Made by a program: the position numbers and the translations under genes. The notes beneath the pieces are model-generated. The model was given only the letters and a program-made list of their open reading frames with translations. It made no database searches and was not told where the DNA came from. This document shows, piece after piece, positions 8,301-57,489 of a DNA stretch of 64,000 nucleotides (positions within the stretch are counted from its first letter, which is position 1; every line of letters starts with the position of its first letter). The DNA is taken from assembly GCA_053919585.1 (NCBI GenBank), contig CM132785.1; one strand, given 5' to 3'. The stretch is from Euprymna scolopes. Lineage: Eukaryota.

Positions 8301-9172
8301 CTTTTATAATGTCTCCTTATTCTTCCACCTATCAAACTATATGTATCTTAACCCTTTTGCATCAAGTTAACGCACTCATAGACATTGCCATCCTATCCTG
8401 CGACCGTCCCCCTATAGTTATACTCCCTATGTCATAACAGAAGAAACTTAAACATATTGCCGCACATTAACTAATCAATATAACAACCTTGAATAACCCT
8501 TCCCCAAATTATAAGCGATTTTATAGCTGCGATTTGCCGTTTAGGTTGCACAAAAACTACCACTCCATAGATAATAGACACCTCACAGACCGTTAAAATA
8601 AATTACCACGCAAGAAAAATACACCCACAATTTAAACCTAAAACATATACCCCTTAAACTCAACAGTAGACCATATACAATCTTATATATCATACTATAT
8701 ATAACAAGCTGCTCCTTTATTTATTTAGAATTCAATAAAGTTTCTCCAACATTCTTTAATCAATCTTAATGTTTTTCGTTCCTAATGAACCCTACGCTAG
8801 ACGCCGCATCTTCCCCTTGCTACCTAGCGTCTCCTCTATTCTTCTGATGAGAAACATTAGGCTTCGAAATGCTCTGGCATAAAGAGTCTCTTCTATCCCC
8901 CGAATTTTGCTTGTATTCCATTATTTGATAAAGGATCAATTCTATATCTACTTTATTTTATTTTTCTTACTTTGAAGATTGTAATGCTGGGTATAGGGGC
9001 AGCCAAACCAGCTGCCAACATAGACTATACCAGTATATATAGTTTTGTGACTTCATTTAATACTCTTGTCGTCCTACTGTATAAGCTCCAATAATAATCG
9101 TTGAACTTGTAATTATCCAGATATGTCTCCTCTTGTAGAATTGAACTCTGTTTTTTACTCTTACACATTAGG

Positions 9173-9173: not shown

Positions 9174-9230
<57 letters not shown>

Positions 9231-9238
9231 ATATATAT

Positions 9239-9628
9239 GGCATCTAAGCTTACGCCTCTGTCCCATCGACGAAACGTTGCATCCCTCTGCTTGTTCTACA
9301 AGAATTTTAATGGTGAGTGCTCTGACGAACTGCAAAACCTTGTGCCCCCACGTCGCAGACACCCTCGACAAACCCGACAGGCAGCTAAATCCCAGCACCA
9401 CACAGTAGAGATCCCTAGATGCAAAAGATCCTTCTACTCCAGTAATTTCTTCCCTAGAACCGCTAGACTCTGGAATTCCATTCCAGGACCATGCTTCCCT
9501 AACTGTACTGACATGCAGAAGTTAAAGTGCAACGTGAACCGACATCTTGCTGCCCAAAACCCTACATAGTGTCCCTATCGTTGCTGACCCTGATAGTAGC
9601 CCCCTACACCTGAGTGGCAATGTGCCTT
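9239..9628 (+). mobile_element. CR1-clade LINE family B, 3' fragment
   Basis: PLSHRRNVASLCLFYK...FFPRTARLWNSIP; closely matches 56380-56770. Confidence 0.9.
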
Positions 9629-9885
9629 NNNNNNNNNNNNNNNNNNNNNNNNNNNNNNNNNNNNNNNNNNNNNNNNNNNNNNNNNNNNNNNNNNNNNNNN
9701 NNNNNNNNNNNNNNNNNNNNNNNNNNNNNNNNNNNNNNNNNNNNNNNNNNNNNNNNNNNNNNNNNNNNNNNNNNNNNNNNNNNNNNNNNNNNNNNNNNNN
9801 NNNNNNNNNNNNNNNNNNNNTTGAAAAATAACAACAATAACAAAATCTAAATTTATAAGCGATAAAAATAAACAGTATAATCAAT

Positions 9886-9953
9886 CTAGGGATTATGGCC
9901 TAACGGTTAAGGCACCAGACTGTGGTAAACATGGTCTGAGGTTCGATCCCTAG
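9886..9953 (+). promoter_or_regulatory. tRNA-derived internal Pol III promoter
   Basis: A and B boxes at tRNA spacing; D-arm GCC-taacggttaa-GGC; CAGAC/GTCTG stem; ends CTAGGGAT/ATCCCTAG pair. Not a canonical cloverleaf. Confidence 0.75.
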
Positions 9954-9964
9954 AAACAGTAAAA

Positions 9965-10009
9965 CTACGCTGATGAGAGGTAAAAACCTTGAAACACGCG
10001 TGTACGTAG
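9965..10009 (+). ncRNA. Type I hammerhead ribozyme, intact, palindromic stem III
   Basis: CTACG-CTGATGA-GAGG taaaaa CCTT-GAAA-CACGCGTG-TA-CGTAG; stem I is a perfect 5-bp helix. Confidence 0.88.
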
Positions 10010-11057
10010 ATTATTGTTTTAAAAATAATAAAATAAATAAAAATGTTATATACGGGCGACTTTCTAAGCAAATAAAAAAATGAGCTCAGAGGCAGCGCCA
10101 ATATTAACCATAGATATCGCTTGAAAAATANNNNNNNNNNNNNNNNNNNNNNNNNNNNNNNNNNNNNNNNNNNNNNNNNNNNNNNNNNNNNNNNNNNNNN
10201 NNNNNNNNNNNNNNNNNNNNNNNNNNNNNNNNNNNNNNNNNNNNNNNNNNNNNNNNNNNNNNNNNNNNNNNNNNNNNNNNNNNNNNNNNNNNNNNNNNNN
10301 NNNNNNNNNNNNNNNNNNNNNNNNNNNNNNNNNNNNNNNNNNNNNNNNNNNNNNNNNNNNNNNNNNNNNNNNNNNNNNNNNNNNNNNNNNNNNNNNNNNN
10401 NNNNNNNNNNNNNNNNNNNNNNNNNNNNNNNNNNNNNNNNNNNNNNNNNNNNNNNNNNNNNNNNNNNNNNNNNNNNNNNNNNNNNNNNNNNNNNNNNNNN
10501 NNNNNNNNNNNNNNNNNNNNNNNNNNNNNNNNNNNNNNNNNNNNNNNNNNNNNNNNNNNNNNNNNNNNNNNNNNNNNNNNNNNNNNNNNNNNNNNNNNNN
10601 NNNNNNNNNNNNNNNNNNNNNNNNNNNNNNNNNNNNNNNNNNNNNNNNNNNNNNNNNNNNNNNNNNNNNNNNNNNNNNNNNNNNNNNNNNNNNNNNNNNN
10701 NNNNNNNNNNNNNNNNNNNNNNNNNNNNNNNNNNNNNNNNNNNNNNNNNNNNNNNNNNNNNNNNNNNNNNNNNNNNNNNNNNNNNNNNNNNNNNNNNNNN
10801 NNNNNNNNNNNNNNNNNNNNNNNNNNNNNNNNNNNNNNNNNNNNNNNNNNNNNNNNNNNNNNNNNNNNNNNNNNNNNNNNNNNNNNNNNNNNNNNNNNNN
10901 NNNNNNNNNNNNNNNNNNNNNNNNNNNNNNNNNNNNNNNNNNNNNNNNNNNNNNNNNNNNNNNNNNNNNNNNNNNNNNNNNNNNAGTATTGCGATAAAAT
11001 AAAGACATAAAAAAGAAACACACCGTAGTATGTGTTCATCAACGTTTCGTCTCTATC

Positions 11058-11101
11058 TTCATCCAGAGGAAGTCTCGAAATAAAGACGAAACGTTCATGA
11101 A
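11058..11101 (+). ncRNA. Minimal hammerhead remnant (core CAGAGGA) inside an inverted duplication
   Basis: TTCATC-CAGAGGA-AGTCT cgaaataa AGAC-GAAA-CG-TT-CATGAA. The inverted arm at ~11020-11052 retains GATGAA, restoring stem I. Confidence 0.45.
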
Positions 11102-11125
11102 CACATAATGCGGTTTGTTCCATTT

Positions 11126-11167
<42 letters not shown>

Positions 11168-11185
11168 ATATATATATATATATAT

Positions 11186-11515
11186 GATAAAAAGCTATAG
11201 CAAACATCTAAATGAATAATTTAACCACAGTTCCTGATTTCAAAAAAAGAAAAATTAAAAGATTCATCCGCCTTACTTTTAATGCTAGGTTTATTTATGG
11301 TGTGTTTTAAATTCAATAAAAACCTTCTTAATTTGCTGATGAGGAGACCTTGCTTACCAAAAAACTATATATAATTATTCTACATAACTTGATGTATACC
11401 ACAATAAAAAAAATTGTTTTCCGAAACGATCGTACAGATAATTGATTTTGTTATTGTTCCTTCTTATGAAACTTATTTTTAATTTAATTAAAATTTGATT
11501 TTTAAATTTTAAATT
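11186..11515 (+). mobile_element. Internally deleted solo pseudo-LTR of the 31-36 kb PLE
   Basis: Reverse complement of 31205-31465 joined to 31603-31678; follows (TC)n(TA)n and runs into a gap. Confidence 0.85.
11331..11439 (+). ncRNA. Type I hammerhead ribozyme with long stem II insertion
   Basis: ATTTG-CTGATGA-GGAGAC...GTTTTCC-GAAA-CGATCG-TA-CAGAT. Confidence 0.72.
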
Positions 11516-13103
11516 NNNNNNNNNNNNNNNNNNNNNNNNNNNNNNNNNNNNNNNNNNNNNNNNNNNNNNNNNNNNNNNNNNNNNNNNNNNNNNNNNNNNN
11601 NNNNNNNNNNNNNNNNNNNNNNNNNNNNNNNNNNNNNNNNNNNTTTAGAATTTCACGTTGGAAAATAGTTGATCTTACATGCTAGAGTTATAACGTCGAA
11701 CATCGCTTACATACGCTTTGGAATGTAAATAGAATCGGCATCAATGACTTGTTGTTGTACATATAAATGGATTCGCAATCTGCTGGTTCCATAGTATATA
11801 GCATCTGCATAGTAAGAATAATTAAACTCTCGGAATTAAAGTGATGATTGTTTAGTTTTTAATGATAAAGATTGAGAACATAACCTAATTTGTTAAGAGA
11901 AATTTTTTATCGGCTTAAGTATATTACCTTTTAGAAAATAAAATAATTTTTCGCATAAAATTGATAGAATTAGTTGGGAAGATAATTTTCTTTAGAATCC
12001 CGCTAATCTTGCTTTCAGCTATATTCCAAGTCTAGCTGAAATTTGCTAAATACGGTTGGTAATAGTGGAAGCACTGTTTGCTTGTGATGAAAAACATTCC
12101 TCCAAAAAGCATTCCTTTAAACGGTGCCCATTATGTATCGAAATTGATTCTAATGAGCAAAAAGTAGAATTTAATATGAGTGTCATATTGAGAAAAAATC
12201 GAACATGTTATTGAGCAATGTGCGGAAACGTGCGCAAGAGAAACAACAAATGATATGACAACTCGGCAAACAACATTTAGATATTTCCTTGTTTTGGCAT
12301 CGGTAACTCTACGGGGAGCCACAGAAATTCTGAAGCAGTTTTTCTCACTCTCAACATGACAAGTGTTTTGCATTGCGTGACGGATGAGAAATGGCGTGTC
12401 GGAGTTATTGATCGCTTCCCGTCTTACTCAGTTTGATTGTATGAACTTTAAATAATTCAGTTATTTGTATTTTTTTCTTTTACGAATAAACAACTTCATC
12501 TCGAAAAAAGTTATTTTAAAATCCTTGGTCTTCGTCGACTTTCAGACGACACAATTTTTATTCGAAACTTAAACTTTAAATAAATTACATTTGTTATTGG
12601 ATTTCTATAATAGGTATAAATATTCCATCATATGCAAATATGACAAGAGATATTATGTAGAAAGAAGACGCCAGCCAAAGCTTAATTTAGAGAAGTTCGA
12701 AAAATGTTATGGTTGTAAGAGAAACAGTTATATTTTATGTATGATACTATATGAAAAATACATTTCCTATGAAAAAATATAAACATCAAATAATATGAAA
12801 CTAGTGGAAATTCTACAGCGGACTCTTTTATATGTAAGATATTGATGTTGGCATTATCTGGATGTTCGGCGTTATTGCAGATACACTGATATTATTGTAG
12901 CTCTTTTGTTAAAATTGCAAATGTATTTCATCTAAGCTATCAGGGACGCCCAGAGAAGCCAGGTCGTAAAATTCACTTAATTATGATAGTTTTATTCATG
13001 CAGATTTCGAATATGATCTTATAAAGTGAATTGCCAATCGATTTTATATATTCTAAAATCGTTGCAGGTCAAGTATCCAAGGACGCCATTGGATACTTTA
13101 CCT

Positions 13104-30586: not shown

Positions 30587-30589
<3 letters not shown>

Positions 30590-30833
30590 CGATAACAATT
30601 AGATCATTCTCTGACTGACGTAAATGAACATTTAAAATAAAAATGTTTTAATTCGACGTTATTTCACGCGGTTAATGGTAGCCTAATTGATTAGGTATTC
30701 GCTAAACCGAACCAGAGATGTCTCGTGATGCGGGGTTCGAATCGTTCGACTGGTATTAATCCTGACACCCTGCACTGAAGATTCCCGAATGGACGAAACA
30801 CTAGTGTCTGTAGGTGTTTAATAATTATTATAG

Positions 30834-30835
<2 letters not shown>
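30587..30835 (+). mobile_element. ~250-bp tRNA-head + HHR unit inserted in (TA)n
   Basis: Starts AAGCGATAA; A box-like TAGCCTAATTGA 30679-30690; B box GGTTCGAATC 30734-30743; HHR 30765-30817; (TA)n on both sides. Confidence 0.78.
30765..30817 (+). ncRNA. Type I hammerhead ribozyme, palindromic stem III, GUC site
   Basis: ACACCCTGCA-CTGAAGA-TTCC cgaat GGAC-GAAA-CACTAGTG-TC-TGTAGGTGT; first pair of stem II is mismatched. Confidence 0.82.
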
Positions 30836-31052: not shown

Positions 31053-31282
31053 GTATAGTTGTTAATCATTCAACGAATTAAAAATGTATGACGTGAATGA
31101 GTTTCCATTCAAGCTAATTGTTGGATTATTTTATTCTGATATATATATATATATATATATATTAAGTAATGTGATTTATAATTTCAAATTTAAAAATTTA
31201 AAAAAATTTTTTAAATTTAAAAATCAAATTTTAATTAAATTAAAAATCAGTTTCATAAGAAGGAACAACAACAAAATCAATT

Positions 31283-31391
31283 ATCTGTACGATCGTTTCG
31301 GAAAACAGTGCTTTTTATTGTGGTATACATCAAGTTATGTAGAACAATTATATATAGTTTTTTGGTAAGCAAGGTCTCCTCATCAGCAAAT
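31283..31391 (-). ncRNA. Type I hammerhead ribozyme in 3' pseudo-LTR, intact core, long stem II
   Basis: Minus strand ATTTG-CTGATGA-GGAGAC...TGCTT...AAGCA...GTTTTCC-GAAA-CGATCG-TA-CAGAT. Confidence 0.78.
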
Positions 31392-31765
31392 TTAGGAGGG
31401 TTTTGATTGAATTTAAAAGACACCATAAATAAACCTAGCATTAAAAGTAAGGCAGATGAATCTGAAAAATTGAAACAAAAGGTTTGGATTTTAAATTTAT
31501 CAGAAAATTAATATGAGTTAGAGATAGAAATAAGTAGAGAAAAATATATATTTTTGAATTTACATAATAAATTTGATTTAAAAATATATAGAGATATTTG
31601 CCTTTTAATTTTTCTTTTTTTGAAATCAGGAACTGTGTTTAAAGTAGTCATTTAGATGTTTTCTATAGCTTTTTATCTTATTGAATGATGAATTTAAAAA
31701 GGGGGACGCTCGTGCGATAAATTGTTTCCGTTAGCGTATTTTTGATTTAAAGACGCTACAGTTTA

Positions 31766-34504: not shown

Positions 34505-34831
34505 ATATACAATTACGTATATAAACTCAACCTGTTATAGGGAGCTAATAATTTAAAGGAAATTAGAACAATAGTCTAAAGAGCTGAGTGTATTTTTATG
34601 TAACAGTGAAATTACTAGTTTAATTAAAATACAGGAAATAGAAAGTGTTCGTTGTATTTTAGATATATAACAAGCTCGATAGTTAAATGTTCTAGAGCTA
34701 ATTCAATATTAAGTAATGTGATTTATAATTTAAAATTCAAAAAATTAAAAAAAAAATTAAAAATTTAAAAATCAAATTTTAATTAAATTAAAAAATCAGT
34801 TTCATAAGAAAGAACAACAACAAAATCAATT

Positions 34832-34940
34832 ATCTGTACGATCGTTTCGGAAAACAGTGCTTTTTATTGTGGTATACATCAAGTTATGTAGAACAATTAT
34901 ATATAGTTTTTTGGTAAGCAAGGTCTCCTCATCACCAAAT
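34832..34940 (-). ncRNA. Hammerhead in 5' pseudo-LTR, core mutated (GUGAUGA)
   Basis: Same as 31283-31391 except C to G at the first core position. Confidence 0.65.
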
Positions 34941-35079
34941 TTAGGAGGGTTTTGATTGAATTTAAAAGACACCATAAAGGTCTCCTCATCACCAAAAATG
35001 ATTGAATTTAAAAGACACCATAAAGGTCTCCTCATCACCAAATTTAGGAGGGTTTTGATTGAATTTAAAAGACACCATA
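34920..35079. repeat. Triplicated 57/46/57-bp unit containing the 5' half of the HHR
   Basis: AAGGTCTCCTCATCACCAAA...GACACCATA at 34920-34976, 34977-35022 and 35023-35079; single copy in the other pseudo-LTR. Confidence 0.9.
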
Positions 35080-35837
35080 AATAAACCTAGCATTAAAAGT
35101 AAGGCAGATGAATCTGCAAAATTGAAATAAAAGGTTTGGATTTAAAATTTATAAGAAAATTAATACGGGTTAGAGATAGAAATAAGTAGAGAAAAATATA
35201 TATTTTTGAATTTACATAATAAATTTGATTTAAAAATATATAGAGATATTTGCCTTTTAATTTTTCTTTTTTTGAAATCAGGAACTGTGTTTAAAGTAGT
35301 CATTTAGATGTTTTCTATAGCTTTTTATCTTATTGAATGATGAATTTAAAAAGGGGGACGCTCGTGCAATAAATTGTTTCCGTTAGCGTATTTTTTTATT
35401 TAAAGACGCTACAGTTTATATATATAGAGAGAATATATGTGTATTAAAAGTTTTAAGGGGAGATAATTGTCATGTGTTCTTGACTTTATTTATTATTTAT
35501 TTTACGGGTCTTAGGGAGGTAATTAGTCTAACTTAATTTATTTAAAAAATAAAATAATAATTGTAATCTATTTTTACTAATAATAATTTTTAATGATTTA
35601 AGGTGGTTTATATTTATTAAATTTAAACCAACGTTTATGACTACATGTCAGAAGCTCATGTCTTGAATTTAATAGTTTGGTTGTACTTTTTATATCTTCA
35701 TATTTTAAAATTTTTAGGGCCTCTTTTGCACATAGTGCACAAAATTTATCTCCTGGTTTATATGATTAGCAAACTAGTAATTTCACTGTTACATTAAAAT
35801 ACACTCAGCTCTTTAGACTATTGTTCTAATCTCCTTT

Positions 35838-35873: not shown

Positions 35874-36021
35874 AGCAAATAATTAATAAAACATGTAAAA
35901 ACATTTTGTAAAAGACTTAAAACATATTTCATTTGAAAGGAAGCATTAAATAAGTGCATAGTCCTTAATCCGCGGAGTTTCGAAGAAATGCTCCCCTACT
36001 CATCAAAGGGTAGGATTTAGC
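35872..36021 (-). mobile_element. HHR-bearing repeat family C, copy 3 (HHR 35963-36009, core UUGAUGA)
   Basis: Minus strand CCT-TTGATGA-...TTCTTC-GAAA-CTCCGCGGAT-TA-AGGAC; 3' end abuts (TA)n 35842-35871. Confidence 0.72.
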
Positions 36022-36340
36022 TCGGTAAGTACTCTGGTGGTTTATCACGGGACTACCGAACCCTTGACAATTTTATGCAGGATTTTTATCGCTTATAAAT
36101 GTTTAATTTTTATATATTTATTTTTTTTTATTGGCGATTAATTTCTTACATTTTATTTCGCCCCTTGCGCGTTTTTATTACAAGAAAAACTACTTATCGA
36201 GCCATTGTAGGTTCGATCCTTGTCAATAAAATCTAGCTATACTGATGAAGAGTATACTCTGTAACATGCATGTATAGCGATTAGTTACTTTTATGCACGT
36301 AGTAATTATTAATTATTAATTAATAATTAATATTTAAATA
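36021..36340. mobile_element. tRNA-head + HHR unit split by an inversion
   Basis: Minus part (36185 to 36021): ATTTATAAGCGATAAAAAT, A box-like TAGTCCCGTGATAA, ending TACTTACCGAG. Plus part starts TACTTATCGAG (36191), then B box GGTTCGATCC 36210-36219 and a degenerate HHR. Confidence 0.65.
36236..36278 (+). ncRNA. Type I hammerhead ribozyme, degenerate
   Basis: GCTATA-CTGATGA-AGAG tata CTCT-GTAA-CATGCATG-(UH missing)-TATAGC. Confidence 0.6.
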
Positions 36341-37987
36341 AAATAAACAAGTAAATGCGTCTTAAAATGTGGGCGAAGAACAATGTAAAGAACGAGAAAC
36401 ATATGTATCATAATTGATCAAAGCTCAAACTTCAATTGTATCTCATGTGCACATTATTCCGAATGTGAATTTTTTGCACAATCGCCACACGGAACATTTA
36501 CCCTGTGAAGCCTACACACCAGATTTTTCTAAAATTCGTTTGAATTTTTAGACAGTAATGTGTATTTCGTCTTCAAATGTGTCCGTGAAATTATAGTAAA
36601 TGAATATATGCGGCAGTTAAAACAGTGAAGTTGTTAAACTTTTCAGAAATCCACTTCTCCGTTTCCCTGTATAAGTGACAGGAAAATGATTTGTTTCTGC
36701 CACACTTATTGTATTTTACAGTTGACTTTGCACCCAATGCTAAGTAAAAATCAACAACAATAAATATAGATAGCAGAATTAACTCCTGTCACGAAGGTTT
36801 AAATATGGATTTTTGTTTTATGATGAAAACACGCGAAAGGACTATTAAAGTTCCGAAATTCTGAAGACCCCTCCCGTGTATTTTTTGGATGGTATATATA
36901 ACGGCATCGGAACGTGTATGTTATAATCTTTCTGTATAACATAGAGGGGTCTATATTATGTACGTATATCTTAGTCGTGACTCGTCCAGTAATTTTAACA
37001 CAATCCTGGTTTGGAACCGCTGCTGGTTGAATAGCCCACCAGATTACCGGAAGTAAAATTTGACACAATTGTCAATGTCGCGAAATGCGTTTTGAAACAA
37101 AATGGAAAATAACAGAGCAAAGACTACAGGTACAATTACACACTCTTCTCTGGTCCTTCTTGCATATCAAATGCATCTGACCTCATTTGACAGAACTGTG
37201 GCTTTCATGCCTTTATTTAACACCGTAATCACATTGAGCATATATATTCCGCATGTCAAGCTTCCATTACAGCTTACGACGATAAACATATTTAAATAAC
37301 AGACATGTTACAGAAATGAAGAAGAACAATTCTTTGGGGTATTAACGTCGGGTCAATCAGAGAAAAACAATGCGGTTCGTTCTTGATTTTGTTTGACAAA
37401 TGCTCAAAAGGAGATTCAAAGAGGATTTCTCCTAATAAATCAAAACAATCTCTCGTTGTTTTGGACTATGCAATTCACCCGTTTTTTTAAACCTCTACCT
37501 AATTCCACGATACTTGAAAATGATCCCTATTTTAAAATTAGAATTAGTGTTCTACATTCTTTAATTTTAAAATATAAATAATTTATACTTTAAAGATTGA
37601 TTTTGCTTTCATAACATTCTGTATTAATTAATATTACTACGATCATAACAATCATCGACTCGTAATATCTTCAACGTTTCCCTGACAATATCTAAGACTG
37701 GCCTTATAAATATCTTGTATTTCACTTAATTTTTCGAACCATCTTATTATCTCTCATCAACCATTGCTATAGAGAAAACGCATATATTATGTATAAAAGG
37801 TTTGTATACGTAAGTAGTCAATTTTGAATTAAGTGTGAAATGCATGCACGATGAATATATAAGCTAAGGAAAATATATGGTTTACCTATACATATACATA
37901 GGGACATGGAATAAAATATAGTGACAGTATTTGAGTCGATCTTTTAAAATCATTGGAAGTAATAATCTATTTAAAAGCACAAAAATG

Positions 37988-39851: not shown

Positions 39852-41600
39852 TAAAGGCCAGGAAGCCACTCAGCGATAAGCGTTATTGCAAGTACATTAC
39901 GTTAGTGTGGAGATTTGATGAAGTGTTTACTTAAGGGGGCGGTTCATTAGGAATTTGTTAACGTTGGACTTGAACACCTCCAAGTTGTAGTCCGGTGGGA
40001 GGCAGGCAGACGGAACAGAGTTCCACAGGCGTGCAGTTCTAAGAAAGAAGCTTTGTTCATGGAATCCACGTTTTGATTTAGGTAAAGATAAAGAGTGGGG
40101 AAAATTTTTCACAGTGGATTCAGCTAGACGGGTGTTTTTCGTGAAAGATTGGCGAGGGGGCACCAGAGATTGGAGTTCCGACGAGGACCTGCCATGGACA
40201 TAGCGATAAAACAAAGATAGGCTTGCAACGTCTCTTCTGTGTGAGAGTGGTGGCAGGGTAGAGAAAAGGTCATCCCCCACTAAGCCACGAAGTCTATTTT
40301 GTACTCTGTCAAGGCAGGATAGGCTATTTTTAGCAGCTCCTGTCCAGATATGGCAACAGTATTCCATCCTTAGACGTACTTGGCTTTTATATAGATAGAG
40401 AATTGCATCGGTAGTGAGATATCTTCTAGAGCGGTAAAAGGATCCCGCCATCTTTCCAGCGACCTTGGCAACCGACTTGATGTACGTGTTCCATTTAAGA
40501 TCAGGAGTAAAGGTCAAATCCAGAAGCTTGACAAACCACGGGCCTCACGCAGACGAGAGCCATCCATCACAATTGATGCCAGCTGGGGATCAGAGCGTTG
40601 ATGATGTAAGGATAGGCGTTTGGTTTTGGATGCATTAAAGGTAACCAGCCACGTCTTCCCCCACTGAACCACGCGCTCGAGATCAGAGGAGAGAGAATCA
40701 GAGAGAACTTTGCCATTTACAGCCTTTGATGTGTTGCCGTAGATGTTCGTGTCATCAGCATAAATGTCAACGAATGATTTAAGTGTGTGTTAAGGGAGGT
40801 CATTGATGTAGATCAGGAAGAGAGTTGGGCCCAGGATTGAGCCTTGAGGGACTCCAGCATTTATATTGCAGGCCTCCGATTTTTGTTGATCAACCACTAC
40901 TCTTATGATCCTATAGGAGAGAAATTATTTAATAATTGAGAAATCATTTCCAGTTATACCGTAGCTGGAAATCTTGTGAAGTAGACCCTTATGCCATTCC
41001 TTGTCGAAGTCCTTTGATATTTCAAGTGCAATTGCCCCAAAAAGGAAGCCTTTGTCAAGAGATTGACTAATCCTGTGGGTTATAACCGTCAGCACATCTG
41101 CGGTAGATCTTTCAGAGGGGAAACCATATTGTGTGTCACTAAGAAGGTTGTTTCTGCTGAGATGGTTGACTATTTCTCTATTTAATATGGATTCAAGCAA
41201 CTTACTCATAACACACAGGAGACTTATTGGTTTGTACTGTGACGGAGATGACTTATCACCTGAATTCTTAAATACAGGGCAAACTGATGAGATCTTCCAG
41301 GGAGTCAGAAAGCGCTTCTCCTTAAGGTAGCGCTTATATAGTTTCGTAAGTTTGGGAGCGAGTTCTGGTTGAAGCTTTTTTAACACTATAATTGGGATGC
41401 CATCAGGGCCAGTTGCTTTACTGGAATCAAGATTCTCGATTAGCTTTTCGACCTCATGCACGGATATTTGTATGTTACCTAGCATGTTCTGTGTTATAGG
41501 AGGAAATATGGGGAGTTGATGGCCTTCGTCGCATAGGGTAGAATTAGCTGCAAAGTTCTTTGCAAATAGTTTTGCCTTGTCTGACGCTGACGAGATGACC
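39852..41600 (-). mobile_element. CR1-clade LINE family A, 5'-truncated, best-preserved A copy
   Basis: [54 protein letters not shown]; 3' end runs into a gap. Confidence 0.95.
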
Positions 41601-42735
41601 TTAGTCACACCCGCACAGACAAGCAGCAACACAGATACACATCTGTTATATATCAGCATTAGCAGAGAGATCCGGCATTGAGGGATTAAATGCTTCACCC
41701 GGACAGAAATTCATTGTCATCAAAATCAGTGAAATCGCCTATTTTAAATCAAATCGCTCTAGTAAATAAAGCATCACCGCAGTGAATTGCGAGCAAGTTT
41801 CACATCCCTCCCCGCAGTGATTTACGCCAACATACTCTGTAGTCTACTCTGCACTGTATAGAATCCACTGATGATTTTCTGAATGCAAGACTAAAGTATA
41901 ATAGTTTAATTGTGTAATAAACAGAAGAAATTATCTCCAACGCGTCGATATCATCAAAGAAAAATCTGTTGATTTTATTCAATCGTTTTTAACTTAATCA
42001 TTTGAGTTAAAGTTTAATGTGCAATACTTACGTATCATGGTTCATTTATTCTATGAAAGGTAATATTTATTTATCCTTCGCCACTGTCTTATAAAATAAT
42101 CTACAGTTTATTTATAGACTGACGTTTTCCTGTGCGTTGATAAAATTCTACTGGTGTCAGGTTGGTAAATGTCTGAAGATTGGTCATAAGAGGACAGTTT
42201 AATTGAATGTTTTTATATTTTACGTTTTCATAAAAGATGTGATGCGATTTCCATTCGATGCTACATACAAACAATTATTTTGTACATGATAAACATGTGC
42301 GTTCATTAAGTTGTCCATGTCGGGCATCTGGGGTGCTATTCAAAACACACTTCTGTAAACCATTTTTCGTATTTTTTATTTTTTTTGTTTTAGTCTCAAT
42401 TTTCAATTATTTCCCTATTACTTGTCTTTTTCTATGTTTTTTTTTATAATTTTTATTACTACATTCATGAGTATTAATTCTAATATTCATTTTAATTTGT
42501 TTTGAGTTATTAAAGTATAGTTAAGTCTTTTGTTTCAATGCAGGTCACTCTCATACGGTATACACGTATTACTATATATAATAAACTGATAATGAGTTTA
42601 TAGCAAATTCGCGTAATCAAAATATATTAATGATTTAATATGTACATATATATATTATATTAAATAATAAATATATTTCTATATAATTATGATTCAATAT
42701 AATATATATATATGTAATTTCCACTATACTAATTG

Positions 42736-55030: not shown

Positions 55031-56802
55031 GTCAACAATCACGAGGTTGTCTCCTCAGCAACCGACAAGGCTAACATGCTTGCCAGTCGGTTTGCCTCAA
55101 ACTCCACACTGGACCCTTCAAACCACCCCCTACCTGACTTTCCTATGCGGACAGACGCCACACTAGACGATCTGAAAACCACCCCTGCTCAGGTGCATGC
55201 TATCATAAAAAACCTTGACACCTCAAAAGCATGTGGACCCGATCTTATCCCAGCTGTGCTATTAAAAAAGTGCTCAGCCGAAGTAGCTCCAGTTCTCTCC
55301 AAACTCTACAACAAATGTCTTAATGAAGCTTGCTTTCCGGGCTGTTAGAAATCTGCTTCTGTTGTACCAGTATTCAAGAATTCTGGCGAAAGGACAGACC
55401 CATCAAATTATCGCCCCATTAGCCTCCTCCCACTTTTTGCCAAAATATTTGAGACCATAATTAACCATGCTCTAGTCCATCATCTTACAGATGCAAAACT
55501 ACTGACTGACAAACAATATGGATTTAGACAAGCCCGTTCCACAGCAGACATCCTCACCGTGATCTCTGAACGTATATACCAATCATTGGACAAAACGGGG
55601 GAAGGCAGAGCGGTAGCTCTAGATATATCTAAGGCTTTTGACAGGGTATGGCATGAGGGTCTCCTCAGTAAAATCAGATCATACGGTATCACTGGTAGAA
55701 TACTTAACATAATTAAATCCTTCTTAGATAAGAGAAAAATCCAGGTAGTCCTCGACGGTCGCTCATCTAAACAATATGATATAAATGCGGGAATGCCCCA
55801 GGGTTCTATCCTTGGACCTCTATTGTTCCTGATATTCATAAATGACCTCCCCGACAACATTGCCTCTGAGATGGGTATATATGCTGATGACACTACGCTC
55901 TATGGCAGACACGACAGGAAGACGAATGAACACATTTCTAAAGAAATGGCAGAAACACTAGAGGAAGACCTCCAATCTGTAGTGGAATGGGGACAAAAGT
56001 GGTTGGTCGCGTTCAATGCTGCCAAGACTAAACTAGTTTCATTCAATAATTACAAGAAACCCTCTCTACCACCAATAGCAATGGCCAACGACCCTTTATC
56101 TGAGAGTCCATCTTTCAAACTCCTTGGCCTAACGTTCACAGGAAACATGAGTTGGAACAATTACATTGAAGGCATTGCCAGGGCCGCTGCAAGAAAGGTA
56201 GGCTCTCTCTACCGTGCTAGAAAACTACTAACACCCGAAAGTATTCTGTACCTCTATAAGGCCACCATTCGCCCATGTATGGAGTATTGCTGCCACATCT
56301 GGGCTGGTGCATCTGCTACTAGTCTCTCGCTCCTTGACAAGGTTCAAAAGAGAGTCGCAAATCTGATAGGCCCTGAACTGGCATCTAAGCTTCAGCCTCT
56401 GTCCCATCGACGAAATGTTGCATCCCTCTGCCTGTTCTACAAGTATTTTAGTGGTGAATGCTCTGATGAACTGCAATCACTTGTGCCCCCACGACGCGAG
56501 CACCCTCGACAAACCCGACAGGCTACTAGATCCCACCCCACACTGTAGAGGTCCCTAGATGTAAAAGATCTTTTTACTCCAATAGTTTCTTCCCCAGAAC
56601 CGCAAGACTCTGGAATTCCATTCCAGGTCCCTGCTTCCCCAACAGTACTGACGTGCAGAAGTTCAAGTGTAACGTGAACCGACACCTTGCTGCCCAAATC
56701 CCTACATAGTACCCCAGTAGTTGTTGCCCCTGATAGTAGCCCCCTACACCAAAGTGGCAATTTGCCTTGTTTGGGGTGAAAATGTAATAAAAAAAAAAAA
56801 AA
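55031..56802 (+). mobile_element. CR1-clade LINE family B, 5'-truncated, relatively young
   Basis: RT with [32 protein letters not shown] and YADD; only one stop (55346-55348) and one frameshift (~56540); poly(A) tail. Confidence 0.96.
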
Positions 56803-57489
56803 TAATAATAATAGTCCACAAGAAGGAAAAGTCTTGCCGGATTGAAGATTTTGCCCTTCCTGACAGACCACAGAATGCAGATCAAGAAATAAATCGCGGA
56901 GTCAATATACGGAACTGGCCAGAAAGATCAAAGCAAATTGGAAAATAAAGAAAGTAAAGATTACATGGCTAATATTAGAACACTATGTACGATAGCAAAA
57001 AAAAAAAAATAGAATGAGAAAGATTGGAGTCGAAGGGATTACAGAAGAGATATAACAAATCGTAAAATTGAAAACTGCAGAAATACTAAGGAAAACCCTG
57101 GAATGTAGAGAAAACACGCCATACATATACTACACACAAACAGGATACATAAACGACTACAGATGCAAAAAAAAAAAAAAAAAAAAATAGGAGCAATACA
57201 AAAAGTAATAAAAAAAACAGAACTGCATAACTATAAGATACCGTGTTTTCTCTTTTTTTTTAATGTCATCATAAGCGGGTACTACTCCAAATAATAAGGA
57301 TCAAGGATGATTTAAAGACCGAATATAGAAAACACTAACCAGACTTCCGCTGGATGAGATAGGGGACTGGAGCCTTAGGGATGCTTATTACCACCCAACT
57401 CCGTGAAGGCCAATGGTCGTCGCCACCAATAATTCAAGAGTAAGCAGCTGTTGCAAGAACGCAACTTCTTTTAAAAAGTTTTTTGAAAG

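What the first reader, a model, noticed from the sequence alone, without database searches (positions are those of the whole stretch)
9821..10130. tRNA-promoter + hammerhead 300-bp monomer, probably a collapsed tandem retrozyme array
Seen: a tRNA-like head (A box 9896-9906, B box 9940-9950) lies 14 nt upstream of a complete type I HHR (9965-10009) whose stem III is the palindrome CACGCGTG. The contig between two gaps begins (9821) and ends (10121) with the same TTGAAAAATA, exactly 300 bp apart. TATCGCTT (10115-10122) complements AAGCGATA (9857-9864), a local hairpin only across a monomer junction; the relative at 36.1 kb has this ATCGC...GCGAT arrangement contiguous. Known: tandem 170-400 bp type I HHR repeats (non-LTR retrozymes, schistosome SM-alpha, newt satellite 2) self-cleave to monomers or circles, and palindromic stem III favours dimeric cleavage. 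Inference: a Pol III-transcribed, self-processing RNA family, likely undescribed in this genome although the general class is known.
Basis: partly seen in the sequence, partly recalled or inferred. Interest (0 to 1): 0.88.

Follow-up and report, generated by a model that had tools for sequence, protein, structure and literature searches.

The report
tRNA-headed hammerhead retroelement copy in (TA)n
This is one copy of a young, roughly 314-bp non-coding jumping element of a large mollusc genome that joins a tRNA-like piece to a self-cutting hammerhead RNA motif; it is a real but already known kind of element, probably copied by a Penelope-like reverse transcriptase, and not a collapsed satellite array.

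Summary

The unit belongs to a dispersed family. The 35-nt HHR core has 805 matches in the 5.9-Gb genome, against 0 for the reversed control. Copies differ 0.3-3.9% from the family majority.

In 68 loci sampled only on the HHR core:
- Copies are 46-1114 nt long (at most 3.5 units). Half exceed one unit.
- 5' ends are scattered. 97% of 3' ends fall at three UA-rich sites.
- 81% of those ends abut (TA)n (background 11%).
- There are 12 head-to-head inverted pairs.

This is the insertion signature of Penelope-like elements (PLEs), not of a long satellite.

Folding predicts an inactive monomer and an active double hammerhead in a dimer.

A young, abundant PLE in the same genome carries its own tRNA-like module and minimal HHR in its 3'UTR, and also ends in (TA)n.

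Pol III transcription, cleavage and circles remain untested; RNA evidence is weak.

The scan had already found this kind of element on other DNA of this genome. Verdict: a new member of a known kind (animal retrozyme / Sm-alpha-like).

The parts
9821..10130 (+). Visible part of the element: one 300-nt unit plus the first 10 nt of the next. The family unit is about 314 nt. This copy lacks 14 nt at about 10053/10054 and differs 2.9% from the family majority.
9846..9860 (+). First 3'-end site of family copies (query positions 26-40, ...ACAAAATC then (TA)n or (CT)n(TA)n). In multi-unit copies this is the unit junction.
   Evidence: 39 of 86 blocks end here, and 35 of those 39 have (TA)n within 40 nt
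9857..9864 (+). AAGCGATA, the 3' arm of an 8-bp stem with 10115-10122 across the unit junction. The stem closes the A-rich loop that holds the first 3'-end site. It is also the 5' end of the short unit form.
   Evidence: part of the circular MFE fold
9885..9954 (+). tRNA-like domain closed by a 9-bp inverted repeat (TCTAGGGAT 9885-9893 / ATCCCTAGA 9946-9954). It is not a foldable cloverleaf.
9896..9906 (+). A box-like TGGCCTAACGG
   Evidence: intact in 25 of 29 copies
9940..9950 (+). B box GGTTCGATCCC
   Evidence: intact in 28 of 29 copies
9965..10009 (+). Type I hammerhead ribozyme motif: helix I 9965-9969/10005-10009, core CTGATGA 9970-9976, helix II 9977-9980/9987-9990, GAAA 9991-9994. The predicted cut is after A10004.
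9994..10003 (+). Helix III, the self-complementary 10-mer ACACGCGTGT. As a monomer it gives 3 bp plus a CGCG loop. In a dimer it gives a 10-bp intermolecular helix.
   Evidence: other families in the window keep other self-complementary strings at this place
10017..10020 (+). TTTT run 13 nt after the cut site, a possible Pol III terminator. Genomic copies read through it.
10033..10056 (+). Second 3'-end site of family copies (query positions 213-236, A/T-rich, ...GTTATATA then (TA)n)
   Evidence: 35 of 86 blocks end here
10115..10122 (+). TATCGCTT, the 5' arm of the junction stem. Several copies start at about this point, directly after (TA)n.

Best explanation
The stretch is one insertion of a young, dispersed, non-coding retroelement with a unit of about 314 nt. 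The unit consists of an A-rich junction, a tRNA-like domain with A and B boxes, a canonical metazoan type I hammerhead with a palindromic helix III, and an A/T-rich tail.

It is best read as a non-autonomous element of the animal retrozyme / Sm-alpha kind that uses the reverse transcriptase-endonuclease of a Penelope-like element.

Shown:
- It is a family spread over all large scaffolds.
- Copies sit in (TA)n microsatellites.
- 5' ends are scattered, while 3' ends fall at a few UA-rich sites.
- Half of the copies are longer than one unit and run through the unit junction and through the HHR cut site.
- Head-to-head inverted pairs have their 3' ends pointing outward.

Inferred mechanism:
1. Transcripts longer than a unit let two HHRs pair through helix III and cut.
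2. Monomers may be circularised by a cellular tRNA ligase.
3. A PLE enzyme nicks (TA)n and primes on UA-rich stretches of a circular or multimeric RNA (or switches templates).
4. This gives permuted copies of 0.15-3.5 units.

The tRNA-like head may drive Pol III transcription, or it may serve as a structural or processing handle. That is open.
For: - Copy number: 805 matches to the 35-nt HHR core within 3 mismatches, reversed control 0. More than 2012 first-look candidates for the whole unit.
- Youth: copies are 0.3-3.9% from the majority.
- Architecture in 68 loci chosen only on an exact HHR core:
  - 83 of 86 3' ends fall at three sites.
  - 67 of those 83 have (TA)>=3 within 40 nt, against 11% background (p about 6e-49).
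  - 43 of 86 blocks are longer than one unit; the maximum is 3.5 units.
  - 12 head-to-head pairs against 2 tail-to-tail.
- These features are the published PLE features: partial tandems, inverted 5'-truncated copies, a 30-40-bp tail and microsatellite bias (PMC8557442).
- HHR fold: the dimer MFE of -30.7 is the double hammerhead, while the monomer HHR fold scores -4.2 against an MFE of -11.9.
- Helix III is self-complementary with different letters in other HHR families of the window: ACACTAGTGT, ACGATCGT and ACATGCATGT.
- The circular monomer folds to -64.7 kcal/mol, z = -5.2.
- Candidate partner:
  - At least 15395 GIY-YIG candidates, 150 of 150 scored over cut-off, in frames up to 870 aa and often in tandem or inverted pairs.
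  - L046:64-1462 is the C-terminal part of an RT plus a GIY-YIG domain, with a 3'UTR holding TGGCCGAGTGG, a B-like box, a minimal HHR, a tail and then (TA)n.
  - That stretch is contiguous at 93-99% identity in 40 or more places, with two 3'-end classes about 35 nt apart.
Against: - No cleavage, circle or discrete transcript was shown. In raw polyA RNA reads only 12 of 9.2 million records lay on the unit, on both strands, with no pile-up of ends at 10004/10005.
- Copy ends do not coincide with the HHR cut site, so the ribozyme's role in the cycle is inferred, not shown.
- The one PLE 3'UTR I could read has no primary sequence similarity to the unit (score 26 against shuffles 22 +/- 3). The partner is therefore not identified.
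- Rfam's hammerhead and tRNA models do not report the motifs.
- The HHR is no better conserved among copies than the rest of the unit, as expected for dead copies.
Confidence: 0.75

Rival explanations
1. This is a long tandem (satellite-like) retrozyme array that the assembly collapsed to one unit. Pol III transcribes it from the tRNA-like head of each unit, and the transcript cuts itself to 300-nt monomers or circles.
For: - The visible piece starts and ends with the same 10 nt, 300 nt apart, and is bounded by N runs.
- A and B boxes stand at canonical spacing.
- True tandem copies of the family exist: L060 has 2 units and L096 has 3.5 units.
- Published animal retrozymes are tandem repeats (PMC7229834).
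Against: - In 86 family blocks only 4 reach 2 units and 1 reaches 3 units; none is a long array.
- The usual form, a partial unit plus a full unit plus the first 28-37 nt of the next, also begins and ends with repeated letters.
- The TTTT at 10017-10020 would stop Pol III about 130 nt into the unit, yet copies read through it.
- There is no tRNA fold.
- The flanks are masked here, so the locus itself is untested.
Confidence: 0.1
2. An ordinary tRNA-derived SINE moved by a LINE. On this reading the hammerhead is a passenger without a role, and the (TA)n tail is a microsatellite that grew from the SINE's own 3' end.
For: - LINE reverse transcriptases are present in the window (RVT_1 at 93 bits at 55559-56548).
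- A LINE 3' fragment lies just upstream of the first gap (9398-9628 is 88% like 56538-56768).
- Many invertebrate SINEs end in short repeats (my own knowledge).
Against: - (TA)n also lies upstream of 52 of 86 blocks.
- Copies longer than one unit and head-to-head pairs with outward 3' ends are PLE traits, not LINE traits.
- There are two alternative 3' ends, both at UA-rich sites.
- The HHR architecture with a self-complementary helix III recurs in several unrelated families and in a PLE 3'UTR.
Confidence: 0.08
3. A DNA-level repeat (satellite or segmental duplication) spread by recombination. The hammerhead and the box motifs would be chance resemblances.
For: No curated model reports the motifs. 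The sequence is A/T-rich and lies among simple repeats.
Against: - 805 dispersed copies on all large scaffolds with unrelated flanks.
- The full HHR descriptor is expected 0.013 times per window.
- The A+B boxes occur in 0 of 100 shuffles.
- The dimer MFE equals the double hammerhead.
Confidence: 0.02

Closest known systems
Sm-alpha / Sj-alpha SINE-like elements of Schistosoma (Ferbeyre et al. 1998; Laha et al. 2000; summarised in PMC2770079)
   Same: A short non-coding dispersed retroposon that joins a tRNA-derived region carrying Pol III boxes to a type I hammerhead. It reaches thousands of copies.
   Different: - Sm-alpha is recognisably tRNA-Gln-derived (tRNAscan calls it). Here no tRNA tool or model calls the head.
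- The host phylum differs.
- Here copies sit in (TA)n, often exceed one unit, or form inverted pairs.
- No sequence homology between the two was tested.
Animal non-LTR retrozymes (Cervera and de la Pena 2020, PMC7229834; Li et al. 2026 preprint 10.64898/2026.07.22.740005)
   Same: - A unit of 170-400 nt.
- Low G+C (33% here).
- A type I HHR with a short palindromic helix III that needs a dimer.
- No coding capacity.
- A highly self-paired predicted circle (z = -5.2).
- Coexistence with HHR-bearing PLEs.
   Different: - Described retrozymes are tandem repeats from dimers to large multimers. Here most copies are 0.5-1.5 units, and the longest of 86 has 3.5.
- A tRNA-like head is not part of the published definition.
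- circRNA has not been shown here.
Penelope-like elements and their pLTR hammerheads (Cervera and de la Pena 2014, PMC4209133; Craig et al. 2021, PMC8557442)
   Same: Insertion architecture (5' truncation, partial tandems, inverted 5'-truncated neighbour, short terminal extension), microsatellite target bias, and an HHR built to act as a dimer.
   Different: - This element has no ORF.
- Its HHR is the canonical type (helix III of 3 bp plus a 4-nt loop), not the minimal PLE type.
- The published (TA)n bias is for Naiads, which lack canonical HHRs. Here the (TA)n-associated PLE I read has a C-terminal GIY-YIG domain and a minimal HHR.

Membership tests
Hammerhead ribozyme, type I | Conserved core CUGANGA ... 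GAAA, with an unpaired H17 before the cut | tested here: met
   CTGATGA 9970-9976, GAAA 9991-9994, GTA with A17 at 10004
Hammerhead ribozyme, type I | Three helices around the core, with helix I open (5' and 3' ends in helix I) | tested here: met
   Helix I has 5 bp, helix II 4 bp and helix III 3 bp plus a loop, or 10 bp in a dimer. The descriptor hits here and is expected 0.013 times per window. The dimer MFE is the double hammerhead.
Hammerhead ribozyme, type I | Match to the curated covariance model (Rfam Hammerhead_1) | tested here: not met
   No hammerhead family is reported at gathering score or at E<=10. The same holds for the PLE minimal HHR in L046.
Hammerhead ribozyme, type I | Self-cleavage | not testable with these tools
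   Raw RNA reads show no pile-up of ends at 10004/10005, but only 12 reads were laid.
Animal non-LTR retrozyme | Non-coding unit of 170-400 nt, low G+C, with a type I HHR | tested here: met
   Unit of 300-314 nt with 33% G+C. ORFs listed over it run through N and are artefacts.
Animal non-LTR retrozyme | Head-to-tail tandem arrangement (dimers to large multimers) | tested here: inconclusive
   43 of 86 blocks exceed one unit, but only 4 reach 2 units and 1 reaches 3. The flanks of this copy are masked.
Animal non-LTR retrozyme | Abundant unit-length circular RNA | tested here: inconclusive
   PolyA libraries only: 12 raw reads, plus family contigs in RNA-seq runs. No test for circles was possible.
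tRNA-derived SINE (Sm-alpha type) | Internal Pol III A and B boxes at tRNA-like spacing | tested here: met
   9896-9906 and 9940-9950. One match in the window and 0 in 100 shuffles.
tRNA-derived SINE (Sm-alpha type) | Head recognisable as a tRNA (fold or homology) | tested here: not met
   ARAGORN finds none at default or -ps. At 70% of threshold it gives only an implausible fold. Rfam tRNA gives no hit. The domain instead closes by a 9-bp stem, 9885-9893 with 9946-9954.
tRNA-derived SINE (Sm-alpha type) | Pol III transcript of the whole element | not tested
   The TTTT at 10017-10020 inside the unit argues against a full-length Pol III product.
Non-autonomous partner of a Penelope-like element | PLE insertion architecture: 5' truncation, partial tandem, inverted 5'-truncated neighbour | tested here: met
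   scattered 5' ends, 12 head-to-head pairs, and a partial unit upstream of a full unit in many loci.
Non-autonomous partner of a Penelope-like element | Shared target with a resident PLE | tested here: met
   81% of 3' ends lie next to (TA)n against 11% background. The PLE copy in L046 ends in (TA)n in the same microsatellite as a family copy. That is only one PLE end read.
Non-autonomous partner of a Penelope-like element | Sequence homology of the unit to a PLE terminal region (pLTR) | tested here: not met
   No similarity to the L046 PLE 3'UTR beyond an A run.
Non-autonomous partner of a Penelope-like element | Young, abundant autonomous PLE in the same genome | tested here: met

The most novel reading that the evidence does not exclude
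In this mollusc lineage a two-part cassette, a tRNA-like domain followed by a dimer-dependent hammerhead, may be a working module shared by autonomous Penelope-like elements (in their 3'UTR) and by their short parasites. On this reading the tRNA-like part does not act, or not only, as a Pol III promoter. It would act as a handle for tRNA-processing or ligating enzymes or for the PLE reverse transcriptase. The priming site would be a UA-rich loop held by the junction stem (9857-9864 with 10115-10122) that anneals to nicked (TA)n. This would give a concrete model for how Sm-alpha-type tRNA-hammerhead SINEs arise from PLE ends, and for what PLE hammerheads are for.
Probability: 0.15. Interest if true: 0.6.

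Novelty: new member of a known kind. Interest (0 to 1): 0.35.

Why it matters
- It adds a second phylum, after flatworms, in which a tRNA-like head is fused to a hammerhead in a high-copy retroposon.
- It gives an unusually clean data set: a young family with about 2% divergence and ends readable against (TA)n. That helps with two open questions: how animal retrozymes are copied, and what PLE hammerheads do.
- An autonomous PLE in the same genome carries the same two modules in its 3'UTR. This fits the recent proposal that animal retrozymes derive from PLE ends.
- For genome annotation, it explains a recurrent cause of gaps and misassembly next to (TA)n tracts.
- It is not a new kind of system, and this scan has already reported the kind several times on other DNA of this genome.

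Tried and rejected
1. Rfam, at gathering score and at E<=10, on the window, the unit and the PLE 3'UTR: no hammerhead and no tRNA. The curated models do not see these dimer-type motifs.
2. ARAGORN at default and relaxed thresholds: nothing credible for the head.
There was no end pile-up and no informative joints, so it neither supports nor refutes expression as a discrete RNA.
4. L034, where a family copy lies 157 nt upstream of a PLE ORF, looked like a pLTR-ORF junction. Thirty-nine other copies of that PLE all start at L034:1740 and share neither the spacer nor the unit, so the two are only neighbours.
5. Similarity of the unit to the L046 PLE 3'UTR: none.
6. Identity between units within a locus, measured at fixed lag, was confounded by indels and is not used.
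7. The dimer fold of the PLE minimal HHR did not return a clean double hammerhead. Its assignment rests on the published descriptor features only.
8. The GACGAAACGTT in the inverted repeat at 11003-11133 resembles the 3' half of a minimal HHR. The same string occurs inside a LINE ORF (9268-9280), so I make no claim for it.
9. L001 and L039 are the window's own locus, returned unmasked by the genome search.
   - One BLAST table listed L001 before I noticed this. It showed only short partial matches beside the full unit.
   - I did not read its letters, excluded both loci from every later analysis, and give that table no weight.

Full report
**The observation**

A 310-nt island (9821-10130) lies between two N runs.
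- It starts and ends with TTGAAAAATA, 300 nt apart.
- An A box (9896-9906) and a perfect B box (9940-9950) stand 44 nt apart. The combined pattern occurs once in the window and in none of 100 shuffles.
- Fourteen nt after the B box lies a complete type I hammerhead (9965-10009):
  - helix I CTACG/CGTAG;
  - core CTGATGA;
  - helix II GAGG/CCTT with a six-nt loop;
  - GAAA;
  - the self-complementary 10-mer ACACGCGTGT as helix III;
  - GTA with the predicted cut after 10004.

A descriptor of my own (core, three helices, H17) finds this site. It is expected 0.013 times per 63 kb in Markov resamples.

Curated tools are silent. Rfam reports no hammerhead or tRNA at gathering score or at E<=10. ARAGORN reports no tRNA, and even at relaxed thresholds gives nothing credible for the head.

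**The ribozyme**

As a monomer the hammerhead fold is worth only -4.2 kcal/mol, against -11.9 for a competing fold. For two copies, the minimum-energy structure (-30.7 kcal/mol) is exactly the double hammerhead. It has a 10-bp intermolecular helix III, and both helices I form in trans. This matches what is published for most metazoan type I and PLE hammerheads, which have a short palindromic helix III and are active as dimers (PMC4209133).

Other hammerhead families in the same window keep a self-complementary string at this position, with different letters:
- ACACTAGTGT at 30.8 kb;
- ACGATCGT at 11.4 and 31.3 kb;
- ACATGCATGT at 36.27 kb.

This is covariation in favour of the intermolecular helix.

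**The family**

The 35-nt core has 805 matches within three mismatches in the 5.9-Gb genome (413 forward, 392 reverse). The reversed control has 0. At least 100 matches are exact, and they lie on all large scaffolds. The whole unit has more than 2012 first-look candidates.

Twenty-nine full units differ 0.3-3.9% (mean 1.8%) from the majority. The window copy differs 2.9% and lacks 14 nt, which is why its unit is 300 nt rather than about 314. The family is young.

**The architecture of copies**

I took 68 loci chosen only because they hold an exact core. That choice is blind to arrangement. I mapped 86 blocks in them.
- Lengths run from 46 to 1114 nt, with a median of about one unit.
- 43 blocks exceed one unit, 16 exceed 1.5 units, 4 reach two units and one reaches three (3.5 units).
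- 5' ends are scattered over the unit, with a cluster just before the junction.
- 3' ends fall at three sites in 83 of 86 blocks: query positions 26-40 (39 blocks), 213-236 (35 blocks) and 305-310 plus a short ACAA tail (9 blocks).
- All three sites are UA-rich. 67 of the 83 are followed within 40 nt by (TA)n or (CT)n(TA)n, against 11% of positions in the window (p about 6e-49).
- (TA)n also lies upstream of 52 blocks.
- Twelve block pairs are head to head with their 3' ends outward; two are tail to tail.

None of the sampled loci is a long array.

This set of traits is what Craig et al. describe for Penelope-like elements: 5' truncation, a truncated unit upstream of a full one, an inverted 5'-truncated neighbour, a short terminal redundancy and a microsatellite target (PMC8557442).

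Nearly all copies run uninterrupted through the hammerhead cut site, and many run through the unit junction. The template therefore cannot be a cleaved linear monomer. It must be a circle, an uncut multimer, or the product of template switching.

The released monomer, folded as a circle, is far more structured than shuffles (-64.7 kcal/mol, z = -5.2), as reported for retrozyme circles (PMC7229834). The fold contains two notable stems:
It closes the A-rich loop that holds the first 3'-end site.
- A 9-bp stem, 9885-9893 with 9946-9954. It closes the tRNA-like domain, so this domain is not a cloverleaf.

**A candidate partner**

The genome holds at least 15395 first-look GIY-YIG candidates. All 150 that were scored pass the Pfam cut-off. 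Many have identical scores, sit in open frames of up to 870 aa, and form tandem or inverted pairs 1.3-5 kb apart.

One such element lies beside a family copy in L046.
- Its frame shows RYVDD, the PLE thumb region and a GIY-YIG domain, and stops at 1059.
- Its 3'UTR then holds, in order:
  - an A run;
  - a perfect A box (TGGCCGAGTGG);
  - a B-like box;
  - a minimal hammerhead (CTGACGA, one extra A, GGCCG...CGGCC, GAAAC, palindromic ACGT);
  - a tail.
- It then abuts (TA)n.

The last 763 nt are contiguous at 93-99% identity in at least 40 places (1498 candidates). They have two 3'-end classes about 35 nt apart, and they occur in clusters of tandem and inverted copies.

So a young autonomous PLE of this genome carries the same two modules and, in the one end I could read, the same target. 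Its 3'UTR has no primary similarity to the unit, so it is a candidate source of the enzyme, not the parent sequence.

**Expression**

The only read-laying run allowed put 12 of 9.2 million raw polyA RNA records on the unit. They lay on both strands, with no pile-up of ends. RNA-seq contigs of other runs hold family sequence. This does not show a discrete transcript, cleavage or circles, and polyA libraries are the wrong kind for that question.

**Pol III**

The boxes are real, but three facts call for caution:
- the head does not fold as a tRNA;
- a TTTT run kept in 27 of 29 copies follows the ribozyme, yet genomic copies read through it;
- a similar tRNA-like module sits inside the 3'UTR of a 2.7-kb PLE.

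**The collapsed-array idea**

Family statistics make a long array unlikely here.

The genome search returned the window's own locus unmasked, as L001 and L039. One BLAST table listed L001 before I noticed this. I did not read its letters, excluded both loci afterwards, and give that table no weight.

**Comparison with what is known, and novelty**

The closest known things are:
- Sm-alpha and Sj-alpha of schistosomes, a tRNA-Gln-derived SINE with a hammerhead (PMC2770079);
- animal non-LTR retrozymes (PMC7229834);
- PLE hammerheads (PMC4209133).

A 2026 preprint argues, for vertebrates, that retrozymes derive from PLE ends (10.64898/2026.07.22.740005). For cephalopods I found only a count of 235 Rfam hammerhead hits in the giant squid genome paper (PMC6962438). 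The run labels say mollusc. That this is a cephalopod is my inference, from the genome size and about 46 chromosome-size scaffolds.

Earlier notes of this scan report the same kind of element on other DNA of this genome. My counts and architecture agree with them and were obtained independently.

**Verdict**

The finding is real and well formed. It is a new member of a known kind.

Noticed in passing
window 8844-8887 (+): A second, unrelated complete hammerhead with a stable, non-palindromic helix III (ATGCTCTGGCAT), so probably active as a monomer. Its 43-nt core has 1916 matches within 3 mismatches in the genome, against 0 for the reversed control. The majority form has a better helix II (GAAGC/GCTTC) than this copy. 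The element seems to end at the (TA)n(TG)n tract at 9176-9240.
   Followed up: partly
window 11182-11515 (+), 31209-31681 (-), 34755-35333 (-): Three copies (93-95% alike) of a repeat that holds a hammerhead with an 80-nt helix II domain and the palindromic helix III ACGATCGT (11336-11434 on +, 31288-31386 on -). The two minus copies lie 3.6 kb apart, like the pseudo-LTRs of an old Penelope-like element. ORFs between them show only faint RT- and GIY-YIG-like strings. The plus copy starts at the (CT)n(TA)n tract just right of the finding.
   Followed up: partly
window 30587-30835 (+): A single 249-nt unit of another tRNA-like plus hammerhead family, set between two (TA)n tracts. It starts with AAAGCGATAA like the unit of the finding. 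It has a B box-like GGTTCGAATCG, the core CTGAAGA, the helix III palindrome ACACTAGTGT, and a 3' end about 25 nt after the ribozyme.
   Followed up: partly
window 35905-36403: The 'relative at 36.1 kb' is a head-to-head inverted pair of an older related family. The plus arm aligns to unit positions 109-310 and the minus arm to 295 through 252. The plus-arm hammerhead has GTAA for GAAA (T at 36262), so it is predicted dead.
   Followed up: yes
window 11003-11133: A 54-nt inverted repeat (85% complementary, 23 nt between the arms) directly after the second N run and directly before (CT)n(TA)n at 11125-11186. It looks like two short 3' ends of some element joined head to head. Its GACGAAACGTT also occurs in a LINE ORF, so no ribozyme claim is made.
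   Followed up: partly
window 9245-9628 and 55559-56810: The sequence just left of the first N run is the 3' part of a LINE. 9398-9628 is 88% like 56538-56768, which follows an RVT_1 frame and ends in an A-rich tail at about 56790. A further RT fragment lies at 40925-41698 (-).
   Followed up: partly
L046:1088-1462 (G000:C5, beside a family copy): The 3'UTR of a young autonomous Penelope-like element contains a class II-like tRNA-related module (perfect A box; ARAGORN gives a 92-nt cloverleaf only at 80% of threshold) upstream of its minimal hammerhead. I found no paper that mentions tRNA-like modules in PLE ends.
   Followed up: partly
window, all N runs: The window holds 2032 N in all, so there are N runs besides the two that flank the finding, for example 11516-11643. 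ORFs listed across them (10064-11207) are artefacts.
   Followed up: no
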